This document shows positions 3,312 through 43,002 of a DNA stretch of 64,000 bases, piece by piece. Each line of letters starts with the position of its first letter. Within the stretch, counting starts at the first letter, position 1. Under the pieces are notes generated by a model. It saw only the letters and a list, made by a program, of their open reading frames with translations. It did no database searches and was not told the origin of the DNA. The stretch lies in the IMG/VR virus record IMGVR_UViG_3300030099_004448, positions 62,001 to 126,000 of that record; one strand, 5' to 3'. The position numbers and the translations under genes are program-made.

Positions 3312-4767
3312 CATTGTAATTGGAAAAAAGAACGAAGTATTTCTAAAGTTAAAGGCAGAACCACACGTATTCCAAGAACTTTCTGAACACTTTACTTTTG
3401 ATGTACCAGGTGCAAAATTTATGCCTCAATACCGTAGTAAGTATTGGGATGGAAAGATTCGACTATTCTCCCCACATACTGGAGAGATCTACGTTGGACT
3501 TTTAGATAAAGTAGTTTCATGGGCAAATAAGTGGGATTACCAAGTAGAGTTTGAAGATAATAAATTCTACGGAACACCTTTTGAAGAAAATGAGATGATC
3601 TCATATGAAGGTGTAAAAGATTACATGACAAGGATCTCTAAGTATAAACCAAGAGATTATCAAGTTGAAGCCGTATATGATGCACTAAAATATAATCGTA
3701 AACTACTCATTTCACCGACCGCATCAGGCAAATCTTTGATGATTTATTCTGTTGTTAGGTATTTTGCAGAGAGAAATAAAAAGATCCTCCTAGTGGTCCC
3801 TACAACGTCCCTGGTCGAACAAATGTACAAAGACTTTGAGGACTATGGTTGGAACGCTGAGGACTGGTGCCACCGCATTTACAGTGGACGTGAGAAGACG
3901 AATGAGTTTCCTGTGGTCATTACTACTTGGCAGTCCATCTACAAACTACCTAGAAAGTTCTTTGATAGTTTTGATGTAGTAATTGGTGATGAGGCCCACC
4001 AGTTTAAATCAAAATCTCTAGTGGGTATCATGACTAAACTTGCAGATGCAAAGTATAGATATGGTTTTACTGGAACTCTAGACGGAACACAAACACATAA
4101 GTGGGTATTGGAAGGACTGTTCGGTCCATCTTATAAAGTTACTCAAACAAAGGAACTTATTGATAAAGGACATTTATCTAAGTTACAAATTAAAATCCTT
4201 ATCATGAGACACAATCCTCAAGTGTTTGAAACATTTGAAGACGAGGTTCAATTTATTATTGGACATGAAAAAAGAAATAACTTTGTAAAAAATCTTGCAT
4301 TAGATCTAAAAGGAAATACCTTAGTATTATTTGCTAGGGTTGAATCACATGGACTCCCTCTTTATGAATCAATAAATAGTTCTGCAGATAAAGGAAGAAA
4401 AGTATTCTATGTTCACGGAGGAGTGAACGCAGAAGAAAGAGAACTTGTAAGAGAGATTACTGAAAAAGAAAATAATGCAATTATTGTTGCCTCTTATGGA
4501 ACTTTCTCAACTGGAATCAACATTAAAAACTTACATAATGTGATCTTTGCATCACCATCCAAATCTAGAATCAGGAATCTACAGTCTATTGGTAGGGTTC
4601 TAAGAAAAGGAAATGGTAAGAATCAAGCAGTTTTATATGATATTGCTGACGATTGCACAAAACAGAATAGAAAAAACTACACTCTCAATCATTTAATTGA
4701 AAGAGTAAAAATATACAACGAAGAACAATTCAATTATGAATTCATCCAAGTAAATCTAAAAGAGTAA
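3304..4767 (+). CDS. uvsW: SF2 RNA-DNA/DNA helicase UvsW
   Basis: WDGKIRLF, SPTASGKS, DEAH, GFTGT, STGINI, QSIGRVLR motifs. Confidence 0.97.
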   Translation: MTDIVIGKKNEVFLKLKAEPHVFQELSEHFTFDVPGAKFMPQYRSKYWDGKIRLFSPHTGEIYVGLLDKVVSWANKWDYQVEFEDNKFYGTPFEENEMISYEGVKDYMTRISKYKPRDYQVEAVYDALKYNRKLLISPTASGKSLMIYSVVRYFAERNKKILLVVPTTSLVEQMYKDFEDYGWNAEDWCHRIYSGREKTNEFPVVITTWQSIYKLPRKFFDSFDVVIGDEAHQFKSKSLVGIMTKLADAKYRYGFTGTLDGTQTHKWVLEGLFGPSYKVTQTKELIDKGHLSKLQIKILIMRHNPQVFETFEDEVQFIIGHEKRNNFVKNLALDLKGNTLVLFARVESHGLPLYESINSSADKGRKVFYVHGGVNAEERELVREITEKENNAIIVASYGTFSTGINIKNLHNVIFASPSKSRIRNLQSIGRVLRKGNGKNQAVLYDIADDCTKQNRKNYTLNHLIERVKIYNEEQFNYEFIQVNLKE

Positions 4768-38510: not shown

Positions 38511-39926
38511 ATGAAATCATTTTCCCAATTTCTTAAAGAAGCCGTAGAAACTTCTGCGTCTGCTCAAGCGAAGAGACTTGGGTTAGAAGGCGATGGTCAT
38601 GGAGACTGGTATGACAAAGATGGAACTCTTGTCGCTAAAACTGTTAGTGGTAAGTTAAAGTTCTTTGGACAAGGTAAGAAGTCAAAAGAAGAGAACAGCA
38701 ATGTAGAGAAACCTACGACATCTAAACCAGATGCTAAGAAATCAGTATCCACCCAGACTCAACCGAAAAAAGTATCTCCAGAAAAACCTGGAGATGCAGA
38801 GGAATCGCAAGAAAAATCAGAGTCTAATGGTGTCGTTATTGTTTTTGGTAGGTTCAATCCTCCGACCATCGGACACGAAAAGTTACTCAATAAAGCTGCA
38901 CAAGAAGCAGAAAAAAACGGATATGAACTAAGAATCTATCCTTCGAGAAGTCAGGATAAGAAAAAGAATCCTCTAGACGCAACTGCTAAGATTGATTATA
39001 TGCGTCAGATGTTCCCCAAGTATGCGGGTAATATTATTGATGATGCAAACTCTAAGACCATCTTCAATGTAATGATTGGTGCAAATGAAGAAGGTCATAA
39101 GAATATGAAGATCATGGTTGGTGCTGACCGTCTTGGCGAGTTCCAAGGTCTAAGTCATAAGTATAATGGTGAACTTTATAACTATGATAATCTAGAAGTA
39201 GTTTCTGCAGGAGATAGAGATCCTGATGCAGAAGGTGCAGAAGGTATGTCTGCATCAAAACTTAGACTTGCAGCGAGTGAAGGTGATTTCAAATCTTTTG
39301 CTAAGGGTGTTCCAAACACACTGAATAATCAGAAGAAAATGGAACTCTACAATACTCTTCGCAAGAGTATGGGTATTAGTGAAACTTGGGAAATTGCTCC
39401 AAAGTTTGACGAAGAGACTTTAAGGAATCGTTATATCAAAGAAGACATTTATTCCATTGGTACTGTTGTAGAAAATATCAATACTGGATTGAAGGGGAAG
39501 GTTTTCAGAAGAGGAACCAATTATGTTATTGCGGTTACTGAAGGTGATGTAATGTTCAAGTCTTGGTTGAGAGATTTGATCGAACATAATGATAAACCTC
39601 ATGAAATTGGAACAGATGAATATAGAAAGTATGTTCAGAAATTAACTCCTGGTCAAAAAATTGCGAGATATAACAAAACTAAAGTTCCTCCCACTATGTC
39701 TGAAGAACCCATAAACCTTAGGGGTAGACGTTTTTTCGGTTTAGGTAGAAAGAATAAGGTTTCAGATTTCAATCATTTGAGATATGGTGGAGATGGATCA
39801 GAAGGTAATGCCGCAAGGAACACTAATAAAAAAGCTCCAGCATATAATTCTCAACAGATGCAATACCCTACGAGGGGACCAAGAAATATTCGCCTAAGAG
39901 GTCCTAACGCTCCCATAGATATCTGA
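38511..39926 (+). CDS. Cytidyltransferase-like (HIGH-motif) protein with N-terminal capsid-targeting-like leader
   Basis: MKSFSQFLKE leader; FGRFNPPTIGHEKL, VGADR, SAGDRDPD, MSASKLR. Confidence 0.85.
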   Translation: MKSFSQFLKEAVETSASAQAKRLGLEGDGHGDWYDKDGTLVAKTVSGKLKFFGQGKKSKEENSNVEKPTTSKPDAKKSVSTQTQPKKVSPEKPGDAEESQEKSESNGVVIVFGRFNPPTIGHEKLLNKAAQEAEKNGYELRIYPSRSQDKKKNPLDATAKIDYMRQMFPKYAGNIIDDANSKTIFNVMIGANEEGHKNMKIMVGADRLGEFQGLSHKYNGELYNYDNLEVVSAGDRDPDAEGAEGMSASKLRLAASEGDFKSFAKGVPNTLNNQKKMELYNTLRKSMGISETWEIAPKFDEETLRNRYIKEDIYSIGTVVENINTGLKGKVFRRGTNYVIAVTEGDVMFKSWLRDLIEHNDKPHEIGTDEYRKYVQKLTPGQKIARYNKTKVPPTMSEEPINLRGRRFFGLGRKNKVSDFNHLRYGGDGSEGNAARNTNKKAPAYNSQQMQYPTRGPRNIRLRGPNAPIDI

Positions 39927-39973: not shown

Positions 39974-42001
39974 ATGAAAAGTTGGAATAGTTTTTCTAAA
40001 GAGCTTACCGAGAAAAAAGCTAAGAGAGATTACGACGGTGACGGCACCATCGAAACTGGTTCTAAAGAACATGCGGGGGTAGTTCATAACGCTATCCAAC
40101 GCGCTAAGGGTAAAAAGGCCGACGGTCAAGATACTCGTAAAGAAGAAGTAGAAGGGTTAGAAGAAACCAAACTGGCAGATAAAGCATACTCTAGAGCAAG
40201 AGATGAAGGTGCTCAGAGACGCCGCACCAAAGAATATAAGGATGGTGGTAACAGAAGCACTACTCGTAAAGAGAAGGGACTGTATAGACTTGCCACTGCA
40301 CAACGCAGACAAGATGCTGACCTAGGAAGACAGAAAGAAGTTGATAGGTCTTCTGGAATGGAAGGTCACATGAAGAAATCAGTTGCTAAAAAGGGTAAGT
40401 ATGATTATGGTGCAGTCTTAGATAAGAAAGATCCTAAGAAAAATCCTAAGCACACTGCTAATAAAAGTACTAAAAAGGAAGAAGTAGAACAGTATGTTGA
40501 CTTCCTTATCAACGAAGGATATGATTGTTCTCAACTTACATGGGAAGATGTAACTGCAGAGTATGAGTGTTTAGATGAAGGTCTACGTGATGCAGTAAAG
40601 AACCTTTTGGGTAAGGGGAAGAAAAAAGAAGAGAAAAAACCTGAAAGCAGAGGTGAACAACTTCGTAAGAAATATAATGTTGGACCAGATAAGTCTGATA
40701 CTTCTGCTAAGATGCAAATTCTTAAGAAGACTCGTGCTAAGAAAGAAAGAGACCAAAAAGAGTTTGGTGGTTCAAGATACTCCAAGTCTGTTGCTAAGAA
40801 GTCTGCTGATGCACATGATCGTTATCTGAAAGGTGGTTATAGTAAGTATGGCGCTGATGATGCAAGAGGTAAGGGAAATAAAGCTCGTAAGCGCGCTGAA
40901 GCACTTAAGAAAGAAGAACTGGAACTCCAAGAACTTGACATCAAGGGTGCAGTGACTGGTGCTCTCGATAGAGGTTCCAAGTTCATGAAGAAAAATCCAG
41001 TTGGTAGAGCAATAGGTAATGTACTGAAACCAGTCGGATCTGGTCGTGGAACAACGCGCCCCGCTCCTGGTGCAAGACCTGGAACTCCAGGCGGTGGTGC
41101 AACAACTCGCCCAATGATGAATTCCCATGAACCAGAAGGTGATAACCTTCAGGAGAAACCAGGTGATGGATATCTTGGTCCAACACCAATTCCAAATCCT
41201 ATTAGGATGGCAAAAGATGCGGTTGATGCAACTAATCGCAACAGCCAGAAAAAGGTTGATATGGTAAACAAAACTTTGGGACGTGGTTCTGCTTCAATGC
41301 CAAAAGTTAATTACTTCAACAAAGGTCCTAGTGCTGCGTCAAAACGGTATCTTGGTTTATCTTATGAACCAGAAGGTGGACTAGTAGAAGGTATTCGTGA
41401 CGAAGATGCAGAAAAGGGAACCGAAGAAAGAAAGAAACGCCTTGAGAAAAAGCGTGGACACAAAGTAGATGATCATCCTGAGTATGCAAAAGAGTCCGCA
41501 ACTCCTGGACAACCTGCAGAAAAACTGAAGACTGGACGTAAGATGTTCACCATCCCTGATGAGGAAAGATCTGCAGCTGCTGCACGTCTTAAAGAGAAGG
41601 CTAGAAAGAAGCGTGAAGAAAAAATGAAGGAAGAAGTGAAAGTTGAAACTCCAGTAGTTGAAGAAGCCGAATCTAAGGCACAACAAAGACTGATGGGTCT
41701 TGCACTCTCCGTTAAGAGAGGTGACACTCCAATGTCTTCCGTAACTCCACAAGTTGCGAAAATGGCTAGAGAGATGAAGGAAAAGGATCTCAAGGATTTT
41801 GCAGGAACCAAACATGATGGTCTTCCTGAAAAAGTCAAGAAGGAAGAACCAGAAGTTTCCTCACCTTTGGTTGAGTCTCTAGTTGAAAGTGCTGTACAAA
41901 GAATGACAGCAAAAGCAAGAAGAGAAACTGCCGCAGATAAAAGACTTAATCGTCAAGCTTCATCTGCACAGCAGAGAGCGGAGTTAAACGCAAAAAAGTA
42001 A
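39974..42001 (+). CDS. Modular Lys/Glu-rich virion (internal head) polyprotein, short form; contains a DUF3008-like module
   Basis: MKSWNSFSKELTE leader; many (L/I/V)-x-E junctions; SKAQQRLMGLALSVKRG...DFAGTKHDGLPEKV module. Confidence 0.8.
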   Translation: MKSWNSFSKELTEKKAKRDYDGDGTIETGSKEHAGVVHNAIQRAKGKKADGQDTRKEEVEGLEETKLADKAYSRARDEGAQRRRTKEYKDGGNRSTTRKEKGLYRLATAQRRQDADLGRQKEVDRSSGMEGHMKKSVAKKGKYDYGAVLDKKDPKKNPKHTANKSTKKEEVEQYVDFLINEGYDCSQLTWEDVTAEYECLDEGLRDAVKNLLGKGKKKEEKKPESRGEQLRKKYNVGPDKSDTSAKMQILKKTRAKKERDQKEFGGSRYSKSVAKKSADAHDRYLKGGYSKYGADDARGKGNKARKRAEALKKEELELQELDIKGAVTGALDRGSKFMKKNPVGRAIGNVLKPVGSGRGTTRPAPGARPGTPGGGATTRPMMNSHEPEGDNLQEKPGDGYLGPTPIPNPIRMAKDAVDATNRNSQKKVDMVNKTLGRGSASMPKVNYFNKGPSAASKRYLGLSYEPEGGLVEGIRDEDAEKGTEERKKRLEKKRGHKVDDHPEYAKESATPGQPAEKLKTGRKMFTIPDEERSAAAARLKEKARKKREEKMKEEVKVETPVVEEAESKAQQRLMGLALSVKRGDTPMSSVTPQVAKMAREMKEKDLKDFAGTKHDGLPEKVKKEEPEVSSPLVESLVESAVQRMTAKARRETAADKRLNRQASSAQQRAELNAKK

Positions 42002-42036
42002 AACCCTCTGAGAAACCTACTTCAGGTTCTCAGAGG
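41980..42036 (+). other. Predicted -1 programmed ribosomal frameshift signal
   Basis: GGAG (41980-83), in-frame A AAA AAG (41992-98), TAA, 6-nt spacer, 13-bp bulged hairpin 42005-42036; the -1 frame is open to 43002. Confidence 0.8.
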
Positions 42037-43002
42037 AAATCTAGAGCTAGACCTCTTTCTGATGATGAAATAGAACAGAAGAAAAAACAGTCGGTTGGAT
42101 TCCAAGCGACCAAGTACCGTTCTGATGCTTTGGTGAAGAAGGCTAAAATTGAAACAAAAGGGAAAATCAAAGGTGAAAAAATAAAGTCCGAAAGACAAAA
42201 AGCTAGATTAGATGATGCTAGGGCTAACAGAGAACGTAAAAAAGAAGAATCAAGAGAAAAAGAAAAAAAGGCCAGAGAACAGTTTAAAGATCAGAAAAAA
42301 GTAAAGAAGGCTGCAGATAAAGCAGAAAAAGCTCAGTCTGCTGCAGATAAACAGAAAGAAAAATCCAAAGCCTACGCAAGTGGCATGTCAAGTGGAAGTC
42401 TCAAAACCGCCTCTTCTACTGGTTCGGGAACAGGTCTAAGTGATACCGCTAGTGCAATGGCGTCTAACTTGGGTACTGTTGCTGTCAGAGCTGCAAACGC
42501 AGGTGCTGCGGTTGGTTCTGCAATTAGAGCAAAACAAAAACAAAACAAAGCAGACAAACTTGCTAAGAAGGCTAAGAAGAGAGAAAAAAAGTTTGACAAG
42601 AAATATAATGAAGAAGTCTTCTATGATTGGAGAGAAGAGTTTCTGCATGAAGTAGAAAAGAGAGGTGACAAAAAAGAAAAAAAGGTCATCGATGTAATGA
42701 GAGGAAAGAACCAAATTGAGTTCAATCCTGTTACTGAAGCAAATGTTTCAGAAGACATGAGTGGTATGTCCCAGAAGTCTGGCGACAAACGTCCTACAGA
42801 TAAAGGTGCGGGTATGACCGCAAAGGGAGTCGCTAAATACAATCGCCGCACTGGTGGTAATTTAAAGACTGCTGTTACCACTCCACCTTCTAAGTTAGAC
42901 CCAGACTCAAAGGCTGCAAAACGTAGAAAGAGTTTCTGTGCTCGTTCTAAAGGTTGGACTGGTGAAAGAGGAAAGGCTGCACGTCGTCGTTGGAATTGCT
43001 GA
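41998..43002 (+). CDS. -1 frame extension of the polyprotein (334 codons); C-terminal DUF6321-like module
   Basis: Open from the slippery site; only a weak TTG/GTG start near 42130; ends GMTAKGVAKY...KRRKSFCARS...ARRRWNC. Confidence 0.75.
   Translation, partial: VKPSEKPTSGSQRKSRARPLSDDEIEQKKKQSVGFQATKYRSDALVKKAKIETKGKIKGEKIKSERQKARLDDARANRERKKEESREKEKKAREQFKDQKKVKKAADKAEKAQSAADKQKEKSKAYASGMSSGSLKTASSTGSGTGLSDTASAMASNLGTVAVRAANAGAAVGSAIRAKQKQNKADKLAKKAKKREKKFDKKYNEEVFYDWREEFLHEVEKRGDKKEKKVIDVMRGKNQIEFNPVTEANVSEDMSGMSQKSGDKRPTDKGAGMTAKGVAKYNRRTGGNLKTAVTTPPSKLDPDSKAAKRRKSFCARSKGWTGERGKAARRRWNC

What the first reader, a model, noticed from the sequence alone, without database searches (positions are those of the whole stretch)
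41980..43002. dnaX-type -1 programmed frameshift predicted to make short (675 aa) and long (~1009 aa) forms of a virion polyprotein
Seen: ORF 39974 ends ...GCA AAA AAG TAA, placing A_AAA_AAG (41992-41998) in the X_XXY_YYZ phase. Six nt later lies a 13-bp stem with one A bulge and a 5-nt loop (CCTCTGAG-a-AACCT/ACTTC/AGGTT-CTCAGAGG, 42005-42036). A GGAG sits 8 nt upstream. The -1 frame reads VKPSEKPTSGSQRKSRARPLSDDE... with no stop into the 42130..43002 ORF, which has only a TTG/GTG start and no evident SD. Known: E. coli dnaX and IS3-family elements use this heptamer with an internal SD and 3' hairpin; phage -1 frameshifts are best known in tail chaperones and capsid proteins. Inference: recoding sets the ratio of two head-packaged products and appends a basic, Cys-containing DUF6321-like C-terminal module to a fraction of chains. 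I do not know of a description of this for cyanomyovirus internal proteins.
Basis: partly seen in the sequence, partly recalled or inferred. Interest (0 to 1): 0.9.

Follow-up and report, generated by a model that had tools for sequence, protein, structure and literature searches.

The report
Conserved frameshift joining two cyanophage genes
A marine cyanobacterial virus and its uncultured relatives carry a textbook ribosome-slipping signal at the end of a virion-protein gene. It most likely lets some ribosomes run into the next reading frame and make a 1009-residue long form beside the 675-residue short form. This is a well-supported new example of a known mechanism, not a new mechanism.

Summary
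ORF X (39974..42001, 675 aa) ends GCA AAA AAG TAA, which puts A_AAA_AAG (41992-41998) in the slippery phase. A 13-bp hairpin (42005-42036, -19.7 kcal/mol) starts 6 nt later. Only the -1 frame stays open, for 334 codons to 43002, and ends in a DUF6321 domain.

Comparative evidence supports a programmed -1 frameshift:
- All 17 distinct orthologous junctions, from independent metagenome assemblies, keep the heptamer and an adjacent TAA/TAG.
- All keep a stable hairpin 5-7 nt downstream, in six different sequence designs.
- All complete copies keep a -1 ORF of 310-556 codons.
- No start codon is conserved in the -1 frame; the first one lies at codon 9 to 134.
- The stretch upstream of any start codon is under purifying selection in the -1 frame.
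- The hairpins are far more stable than synonymous recodings of the same peptide.
- All 65 related protein clusters end K-K-stop, and none is an in-frame fusion.

This rules out assembly error, pseudogene decay and two independent genes. The upstream GGAG is not conserved. "Virion" rests on synteny with proteins detected by mass spectrometry (MS) in phage S-SCSM1 virions. "Head-packaged polyprotein" remains inference. I found no prior description.

Verdict: a new member of a known kind (dnaX/IS3-like cassette, T7 10A/10B-like logic). No experiment has tested it yet.

The parts
39974..42001 (+). ORF X, 0 frame, 675 aa. A mosaic Lys/Glu-rich protein and the short product.
   Evidence: Homologues are modular, with a conserved N-terminus and C-terminus. 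Syntenic with the S-SCSM1 virion-protein cluster.
39974..40012 (+). N-terminal motif shared with the neighbouring cytidylyltransferase-like gene and resembling the N-termini of T4 ipII/ipIII. Possible capsid-targeting signal (inference).
   Evidence: alignment with T4 sequences fetched. Four invariant positions in the first 10 residues.
41666..41836 (+). DUF3008 domain of X (aa 565-621).
   Evidence: E 1.6e-13
41980..41983 (+). GGAG, a Shine-Dalgarno-like tetramer 8 nt upstream of the heptamer. Not conserved.
41992..41998 (+). Slippery heptamer A_AAA_AAG in X_XXY_YYZ phase.
   Evidence: Invariant in 17/17 distinct orthologous junctions, whereas other Lys codons nearby vary AAA/AAG.
41999..42001 (+). 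0-frame stop TAA immediately 3' of the heptamer.
   Evidence: The stop sits at this position in 17/17 junctions: TAA in 15, TAG in 2.
42005..42036 (+). Stimulatory RNA hairpin: 13 bp, one bulged A, 5-nt loop, 6-nt spacer.
41998..43002 (+). -1 frame ORF Y: 334 codons plus stop. No start codon before TTG 42130. It forms the C-terminal extension of the long product.
42799..42966 (+). DUF6321 domain (Y aa 268-323): basic, two invariant Cys.

Best explanation
**Mechanism.** This is a programmed -1 ribosomal frameshift. Ribosomes translating X reach A_AAA_AAG with the two lysyl-tRNAs on AAA and AAG. The hairpin 6 nt downstream sits at the mRNA entry channel and resists unwinding, and the next 0-frame codon is a stop. 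A fraction of ribosomes slip one base back (AAA AAG to AAA AAA), read GUA next, and continue for 334 codons. Ribosomes that do not slip terminate at TAA.

**Products.** Two proteins result with the same N-terminus: X (675 aa) and X-Y (1009 aa). The ratio is fixed by the RNA signal. Y has no start codon of its own at a conserved place, so it is made only as an extension of X.

**Shown here**
- The anatomy of the signal.
- Its strict conservation.
- RNA-level selection on the hairpin.
- Protein-level selection on the -1 frame upstream of any start codon.

**Inferred**
- Slippage actually happens on cyanobacterial ribosomes, and how efficiently.
- Both forms are virion proteins brought into the head through X's N-terminal signal.
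- The frameshift sets how many copies of the basic DUF6321 module are packaged relative to X.
For: **Anatomy**
- The cassette's anatomy is exact.
- Only the -1 frame is open.

**Conservation across 17 distinct junctions from IMG/VR, JGI, ENA and TARA assemblies**
- All have AAAAAAG plus TAA/TAG.
- None has a start codon between the upstream -1 stop and the site.
- The first -1 start codon lies anywhere from codon 9 to codon 134.
- The -1 ORF is 310-556 codons where complete.
- The three synonymous sites of the heptamer are invariant, while Lys codons at -29 and -20 split 12:5 and 11:6.

**Hairpin**
- Six hairpin designs fold at -18.3 to -27.3 kcal/mol, each starting 5-7 nt after the heptamer.
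- All beat synonymous recodings of their own peptide: z -3.3 to -6.5, with at most 0.5% of 2000 recodings as stable.
- There is one U-A to C-G compensatory pair. There are also G-U wobbles, which would be C-A mismatches on the other strand.
- Lineage L110/L118 has matched 3-nt insertions in both arms.

**Coding signal in the -1 frame upstream of any start codon**
- pN/pS is 0.39 in one group of junctions.
- It is 0.21 in the other group, and 0.06 there once the hairpin is excluded, with 22 variable third positions against 3 first and 1 second.

**No alternative gene structure**
- All 65 protein clusters sharing X's C-terminal module end K-K-stop. None carries both DUF3008 and DUF6321, although candidates up to 1181 aa were eligible.
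- Gene callers start Y at many different internal codons.

**Specificity of the site**
- Three other in-phase heptamers inside Y have no hairpin (z -0.9 to +0.75). Two of them are present in only 1 of 17 junctions.
- The hairpin is not terminator-like, and no promoter-like site precedes Y.

**Supporting context**
- An in-frame protein combining an X module with DUF6321 exists in another phage (P0107).
- Established knowledge: A_AAA_AAG is the most shift-prone -1 heptamer in E. coli, where a single tRNA-Lys reads both codons (Atkins et al. 2016, PMC5009743).
Against: - There is no experimental evidence of any kind: no peptides, reporter assay or ribosome profiling.
- The Lys-tRNA repertoire of the unknown host was not examined. 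About half of bacteria have a second tRNA-Lys, which lowers slippage on this heptamer (PMC5009743). The window encodes no tRNA.
- In-phase A_AAA_AAG is tolerated about 8 other times in the window's long open frames, 3 of them in Y. Basal slippage in this host may therefore be low.
- The SD-like GGAG is not conserved.
- Formal covariation on the MAFFT alignment is weak: one compensatory pair, with a bottom stem that is nearly invariant. The sequences are closely related.
- One lineage (L108/L126) has GGAGG plus ATG inside the hairpin, so Y could start independently there.
- No cultured phage carries the cassette.
Confidence: 0.85

Rival explanations
1. X and Y are two independent genes. Y is initiated at an internal TTG/GTG/ATG (42130 in the window), and the hairpin serves another purpose such as mRNA stability or processing.
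For: Gene callers annotate it this way everywhere. One lineage has GGAGG plus ATG inside the hairpin (L108/L126).
Against: The first start codon sits at codon 9 to 134 in different orthologues and is never conserved. The stretch upstream of it is under purifying selection in the -1 frame. This view gives no reason for an invariant A_AAA_AAG plus stop. No SD precedes TTG 42130.
Confidence: 0.05
2. The long form comes from transcriptional slippage: RNA polymerase adds one A in the A6 run. This gives the same protein as a -1 ribosomal shift.
For: The product would be identical (inference from the sequence). Slippage on A runs is known in bacteria and IS elements (PMC5009743).
Against: Six A's is short for efficient polymerase slippage (established knowledge). 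The conserved hairpin lies 5-7 nt downstream, which is the geometry of a ribosomal stimulator and not of a nascent-RNA hairpin upstream of the run. The terminal G of the heptamer and the adjacent stop are invariant.
Confidence: 0.05
3. It is an artefact or decay: an assembly or sequencing indel in the A run, or a recently frameshifted pseudogene of a once single gene.
For: Homopolymer runs are error-prone. Mosaic in-frame proteins with DUF6321 at the end exist in other phages.
Against: The same A6G plus stop appears in 17 distinct sequences, and many more contigs, from unrelated samples and assemblers. Both frames remain under selection across lineages that differ in hairpin design and in Y modules. 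No in-frame version exists among the 65 clusters.
Confidence: 0.01
4. The palindrome acts at the DNA level, as a protein-binding site or a recombination joint between mosaic modules, or it is a transcription terminator between X and Y.
For: X and Y are strongly mosaic, with modules swapped between relatives.
Against: There is no T run after the stem and the terminator scan does not call it. G-U pairs in three variants would be mismatches on the other strand and in duplex cruciforms. Spacing to the heptamer is fixed at 5-7 nt.
Confidence: 0.02

Closest known systems
E. coli dnaX tau/gamma -1 frameshift cassette
   Same: Identical heptamer A_AAA_AAG. A simple stem-loop about 6 nt downstream. An SD-like purine tract upstream in most copies. 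A fixed-ratio pair of products sharing an N-terminus.
   Different: In dnaX the shifted frame stops almost at once, so shifting makes the shorter protein. Here the 0 frame stops at once and shifting adds 334 residues. A 0-frame stop abuts the heptamer. The SD-like element is 8 nt away and not conserved. There is no sequence or structure homology: no Rfam family, the DnaX element included, scored at E <= 10. Host and gene family are unrelated.
IS3-family (IS911, IS150, IS3) orfA-orfB frameshift
   Same: A_AAA_AAG is common there. A 3' hairpin or pseudoknot is present. The downstream ORF lacks a start of its own and is made only as a fusion to the upstream ORF.
   Different: This is not a transposase and not a mobile element. 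Both proteins here are phage virion-type mosaic proteins.
Phage C-terminal-extension frameshifts: T7 gene 10A/10B, lambda G/GT tail chaperone, Lactobacillus phage A2 major head protein
   Same: A -1 slip near the 3' end of a phage structural or assembly gene gives a minor long form at a fixed ratio. The signal is conserved among relatives.
   Different: The slippery sequences and protein families differ. T4-like phages are reported to make their tail chaperone by another route (Vladimirov et al. 2022, cited in PMC10885494). The extension here is very long (334 aa) and modular.
'Shifty stop' frameshifts, e.g. Bacillus subtilis cdd (from memory; Weiss et al. 1987 is listed in PMC5009743)
   Same: A stop codon immediately 3' of the shift site, which is thought to give time for slippage.
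   Different: Those sites use single-tRNA slippage and give short extensions. Here a full tandem heptamer and a hairpin are present.
T4 internal proteins (IPII, IPIII) and other head-targeted cargo
   Same: A similar N-terminal motif in the first 10 residues. Basic proteins. E-[VLI]-E motifs like the sites cut by the T4 prohead protease (the site rule is from established knowledge).
   Different: No detectable homology beyond the short motif. The proteins are far larger and mosaic. Head location and cleavage are untested.

Membership tests
dnaX-type -1 PRF cassette (functional class) | Tandem slippery heptamer A_AAA_AAG in X_XXY_YYZ phase | tested here: met
   17/17 orthologous junctions
dnaX-type -1 PRF cassette (functional class) | Stable stem-loop 5-8 nt 3' of the heptamer | tested here: met
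   6-nt spacer, -19.7 kcal/mol. Conserved in six designs. Synonymous-recoding z is -3.3 to -6.5.
dnaX-type -1 PRF cassette (functional class) | Shine-Dalgarno-like stimulator about 10 nt 5' of the heptamer | tested here: inconclusive
   GGAG lies 8 nt upstream in the window. Across junctions: GGAG 10, GGGG 3, AGGA 2, TGAG 1, AGAG 1.
dnaX-type -1 PRF cassette (functional class) | Measured frameshifting on the host's ribosomes | not testable with these tools
   Needs a reporter assay, proteomics or ribosome profiling.
Rfam DnaX ribosomal frameshifting element (homology) | Match to the covariance model | tested here: not met
   No frameshift-element family among matches at E <= 10 for 41900-42120.
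IS3-family orfA-orfB frameshift | Products are a transposase and its regulator inside an insertion sequence | tested here: not met
   Pfam, PHROGs and NCBIfam give DUF3008 and DUF6321 only. The locus is a syntenic phage gene cluster.
Phage structural-gene C-terminal-extension PRF (T7 10A/10B type) | Slip site at the 3' end of the upstream ORF, with a -1 ORF lacking its own conserved start | tested here: met
Phage structural-gene C-terminal-extension PRF (T7 10A/10B type) | Both forms present in the virion or needed for assembly | not testable with these tools
   Indirect only: the syntenic S-SCSM1 genes are MS-detected virion proteins.
T4-type head-targeted internal proteins | N-terminal capsid-targeting sequence | tested here: inconclusive
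   A 10-residue resemblance to T4 ipII/ipIII, shared with the neighbouring gene. Too short for statistics.
T4-type head-targeted internal proteins | Cleavage by the prohead protease after Glu in [LIV]-x-E, and location inside the head | not testable with these tools
   E-[VLI]-E motifs occur 3 times in X and 2 times in Y. Cleavage is unknown.

The most novel reading that the evidence does not exclude
The frameshift may act as a dosing device for head-packaged, injected cargo. X's N-terminal signal would carry both forms into the prohead. Only the frameshifted fraction would bring in the Y modules, and the prohead protease would then free the basic DUF6321 domain at E-[VLI]-E sites. The RNA hairpin would thereby set the copy number of a DNA-associated or host-directed protein per virion. 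That would be the first recoding event known to control internal or ejected proteins of a T4-like phage, and the first well-supported -1 PRF in a cyanophage translated by picocyanobacterial ribosomes.
Probability: 0.3. Interest if true: 0.65.

Novelty: new member of a known kind. Interest (0 to 1): 0.5.

Why it matters
- **Annotation.** In every assembly examined, gene callers truncate Y at an arbitrary internal start and leave 100-400 nt of "intergenic" DNA that is in fact coding.
- **New test case.** It adds a clean, conserved -1 frameshift to the T4-like cyanophages, where I found none described. It gives a natural cassette for testing how marine picocyanobacterial ribosomes respond to the classical E. 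coli signal.
- **Function of DUF6321.** It links two widespread domains of unknown function, DUF3008 and DUF6321, in one polypeptide. DUF6321 occurs in pelagiphages, T7-like cyanophages and cyanomyoviruses. It can now be studied as a module delivered at sub-stoichiometric dose.
- **Limits.** The mechanism is canonical and no long-standing question turns on it.

Tried and rejected
- **Deposited phage genomes.** Megablast and blastn of the junction against 50,697 genomes found no relative carrying the cassette. tblastn of X and Y found only single shared modules.
- **DNA pattern search in viral contigs.** It gave 4 true loci and one chance hit (L092: in frame, no stop, no hairpin).
- **Formal covariation.** On a MAFFT alignment only one compensatory pair appears, because the bottom stem is almost invariant and the lineages with insertions are mis-registered. 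I relied instead on per-design folding and a synonymous-recoding null.
- **Possible second K-K-K-stop frameshift in distant relatives.** Rejected: they have AAG AAG AAG and a TAATG stop/start overlap with a separate DUF3008 ORF.
- **Internal in-phase heptamers in Y as further sites.** Rejected: no hairpin, short -1 frames, poor conservation.
- **Function of DUF6321.**
  - AlphaFold gave a small helical model, pLDDT 82.
  - It has no PDB analogue by fold or by sequence.
  - BFVD returned only other DUF6321 proteins.
- **Other libraries.** Rfam gave no family. NCBIfam gave nothing for X or Y.
- **Literature.** Searches for cyanophage frameshifting, DUF3008 and DUF6321 found nothing relevant.
- **Not attempted.** A host tRNA-Lys census, because there was no way to target the host genome with the tools.
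Full report
**1. The observation**

- ORF X runs 39974..42001 and encodes 675 aa.
- It ends GCA AAA AAG TAA, so A_AAA_AAG (41992-41998) lies in the X_XXY_YYZ phase and the stop is the very next codon.
- Six nucleotides later, 42005-42036 forms a hairpin of 8 + 5 base pairs with one bulged A and a 5-nt loop. MFE is -19.7 kcal/mol and z is -3.7 against dinucleotide shuffles.
- Among 21,320 overlapping 40-nt windows of the + strand, only 13 fold as well, and three of those are this hairpin.
- GGAG sits at 41980-41983.
- From 41998 the -1 frame is open for 334 codons to 43002. The 0 frame closes again after 23 codons and the +1 frame after 5.
- In the -1 frame the nearest upstream stop is 17 codons before the site, with no start codon between. 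The first ATG/GTG/TTG downstream is TTG 42130, 44 codons in.
- The heptamer alone is not unusual. In-phase AAAAAAG occurs about nine times in long open frames of the + strand, three of them inside Y.

**2. What the locus is**

- The window is part of IMG/VR contig IMGVR_UViG_3300030099_004448, 238,937 bp.
- It is a T4-like cyanomyovirus: DNA polymerase, UvsX, DnaB-like helicase, primase, NrdA/NrdB and a tail-fibre-like protein flank the locus.
- X and Y lie in a small cluster between the helicase region and the primase gene. The order is a 375-aa protein, a cytidylyltransferase-like protein, X, Y, then a 476-aa protein.
- Comparable clusters occur at this position in Synechococcus phages S-SRM01, S-SCSM1 and S-CAM7: a cytidylyltransferase/NMNAT gene followed by a large mosaic ORF, upstream of primase.
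- In S-SCSM1 four consecutive genes of that cluster (gp282 to gp279), the NMNAT-like protein among them, are annotated as virion proteins. The paper found 45 phage proteins by mass spectrometry of CsCl-purified particles (PMC9602691).
- X carries DUF3008 (aa 565-621). Y ends in DUF6321 (aa 268-323).
- Both proteins are Lys/Arg-rich, with net charge +42 and +45.
- Both are strongly mosaic. Homologues share the N-terminus and the C-terminal 120 residues of X but swap internal modules. Y orthologues gain or lose a Cys-rich insert and a Pro/Thr-rich insert of about 220 aa.

**3. Comparative test of the frameshift**

No deposited phage genome carries the junction. I therefore collected relatives from viral and metagenome contigs and from the protein collection.

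The protein search gave 65 clusters that share X's C-terminal module.
- Every one ends ...L-[NK]-[AV]-K-K-stop.
- Their lengths are 372-675 aa.
- None carries both DUF3008 and DUF6321, although candidates up to 1181 aa were eligible.
- So there is no in-frame fused orthologue.

At the DNA level I obtained 17 distinct junction sequences, many seen in several independent assemblies from JGI, ENA, TARA and IMG/VR.
- All 17 have AAAAAAG followed directly by TAA (15) or TAG (2).
- All have a closed -1 frame shortly upstream without a start codon.
- All have a -1 ORF of 310-556 codons where the contig is long enough.
- Their first start codon in that frame lies anywhere between codon 9 and codon 134.
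- This excludes an assembly error in the A run and recent pseudogene decay.

The heptamer's synonymous sites also look selected.
- The three synonymous positions of the heptamer never vary, even where the preceding codon changed from GCA to GTA.
- Lys codons 20 and 29 codons upstream split AAG/AAA 11:6 and 12:5.
- At three internal x-K-K positions of Y that are slippery in the window, the heptamer is present in 1 of 17, 1 of 17 and 10 of 17 junctions. None of the three has a downstream hairpin.

**4. The hairpin is selected as RNA**

The 17 junctions fall into six hairpin designs.
- Most share the bottom stem CCUCUGAG/CUCAGAGG.
- One group has a U-A to C-G change in that stem.
- One group has G-U wobbles.
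- One group has matched 3-nt insertions in both arms, giving a perfect 12-bp stem.
- The upper halves are quite different, with the purine and pyrimidine strands exchanged, or are longer.

All designs fold at -18.3 to -27.3 kcal/mol, with the main stem starting 5-7 nt after the heptamer.

The arms also encode a conserved peptide, so I compared each real sequence with 2000 synonymous recodings of its own -1 frame peptide. The real hairpins are 3.3 to 6.5 standard deviations more stable, and at most 0.5% of recodings reach them.

RNAalifold and pair counting on a plain MAFFT alignment confirm the 8-9 bp bottom stem. They show 95% of cells paired, against 33-59% when the partner is slid. They record only one compensatory pair, because the stem is nearly invariant and the insertion lineages are mis-registered. 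The covariation statistic is therefore weak by itself.

The G-U pairs argue for a structure in the sense RNA and not a DNA palindrome. The hairpin has no T tail and is not called as a terminator. No promoter-like site precedes Y. No Rfam family matches.

**5. The -1 frame is coding from the shift site onward**

Y orthologues align from their first codon. In the stretch that precedes every start codon:
- pN/pS in the -1 frame is 0.39 in the group with the long N-terminal segment.
- It is 0.21 in the other group.
- In that second group it falls to 0.06 when the hairpin codons are left out, with 22 variable third positions against 3 first and 1 second.

Gene callers begin Y at many different internal codons and leave 24-400 nt unassigned after X. 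Y is therefore a protein-coding extension that can be reached only from X's frame.

**6. Mechanism**

The best explanation is tandem -1 slippage of the two lysyl-tRNAs on A_AAA_AAG. It would be stimulated by the 3' hairpin at the canonical spacing and probably also by the adjacent stop codon, a "shifty stop".
- Non-shifted ribosomes release X (675 aa).
- Shifted ribosomes read GUA and continue to the 1009-aa X-Y.
- The heptamer is the most shift-prone one known in E. coli, whose single tRNA-Lys pairs weakly with AAG. About half of bacteria share that property (PMC5009743).
- I could not test whether the host does. The efficiency is therefore unknown.
- The upstream GGAG is present in 10 of 17 junctions, replaced by GGGG or AGGA in five, and lost in two. 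I do not count it as part of the conserved signal.
- Transcriptional insertion of one A would give the same protein. However, it does not explain a conserved downstream hairpin or the invariant G and stop.

**7. What the two forms may do (inference)**

- X and the neighbouring cytidylyltransferase-like protein begin with the same short motif. It aligns with the N-termini of T4 ipII and ipIII, fetched from NC_000866.
- X has three E-[VLI]-E motifs and Y has two. In X homologues such motifs often sit at module boundaries. This is the kind of site the T4 prohead protease cuts (established knowledge).
- Together with the S-SCSM1 virion data, this fits head-targeted cargo that is cut into modules.
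- On that view Y has no start and no targeting signal of its own. It reaches the particle only when fused to X, at a dose set by the frameshift.
- DUF6321 is a highly conserved, very basic domain of about 60 residues with two invariant Cys. It is predicted as a small helical fold (pLDDT 82) without a PDB analogue.
- It occurs alone or at the C-terminus of proteins in T7-like cyanophages, pelagiphages and many cyanomyoviruses.
- In another uncultured cyanomyovirus it is found in frame with an X-type module (P0107). This supports X-Y as a sensible polypeptide.
- In more distant relatives the DUF3008 module is a separate small ORF joined by a TAATG overlap. This gene family thus joins its modules in several ways.

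**8. Comparison with known systems and novelty**

- In signal anatomy the cassette works like E. coli dnaX and IS3-family frameshifts.
- In logic it resembles IS3 orfAB, T7 10A/10B, lambda G/GT and the major head protein of Lactobacillus phage A2: a minor long form of a phage structural or assembly protein.
- It is not homologous to any of them.
- Full-text searches found no description of programmed frameshifting in cyanophages, and no paper mentioning DUF3008 or DUF6321. A cited study reports that T4-like phages do not use frameshifting for their tail chaperone.
- I therefore class it as a new member of a known kind. It is well supported by comparative evidence, untested experimentally, and of moderate interest.

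Noticed in passing
window 38511-38549 and 39974-40012: X and the neighbouring cytidylyltransferase-like gene start with the same short motif. It aligns with the N-termini of T4 ipII/ipIII, so it may be a shared capsid-targeting signal for a cluster of virion cargo genes.
   Followed up: partly
window 42678-42684: A further in-phase A_AAA_AAG inside Y is present in 10 of 17 orthologous junctions. The -1 frame closes after 11 codons and no hairpin follows. A slip there would drop the DUF6321 domain. It is probably tolerated noise.
   Followed up: partly
L082, L085, L108, L119, L121 and others (Y orthologues); L095 and L100: Y orthologues carry optional modules that the window lacks: a Cys-rich insert of about 25 aa just before DUF6321, and in L095/L100 a Pro/Thr-rich insert of about 220 aa.
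   Followed up: no
L133 3850-3860; L135 2376-2386; L088 5984-5991 (S-SCSM1): In more distant relatives DUF3008 is a separate small ORF placed right after the upstream gene. The join is a TAATG overlap in L133 and L135, and a 2-nt gap after TGA in S-SCSM1. There is no slippery heptamer. The gene family joins its modules in different ways.
   Followed up: yes
L108 280-340 (same sequence as L126): One hairpin variant contains GGAGG followed by ATG in its loop region. Y might be initiated independently in that lineage. Sister variants L114 and L125 lack the ATG.
   Followed up: partly
L124 about 4150-4200: This assembly has a run of N exactly at the hairpin, right after the heptamer and stop. It is either a scaffolding gap or masking.
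   Followed up: no
window about 25189, 60910, 47272, 16702, 16948, 51133, 18892 (+ strand): These are other 40-nt segments that fold as well as or nearly as well as the frameshift hairpin (-19.5 to -21 kcal/mol). They may be terminators at gene ends.
   Followed up: no
window 42739-42999 and loci L004-L080: DUF6321 is very widely spread in marine phages. They include pelagiphages and T7-like cyanophages, where it can be a stand-alone 75-aa protein next to the terminase gene. Its function is unknown and it has no structural analogue in the PDB.
   Followed up: partly
L092 936-959 (435-kb contig): This was a chance match to the DNA search pattern. It lies in frame inside an unrelated ORF, with no stop and no hairpin. 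It is a reminder that 21 specified bases can still hit by chance.
   Followed up: yes
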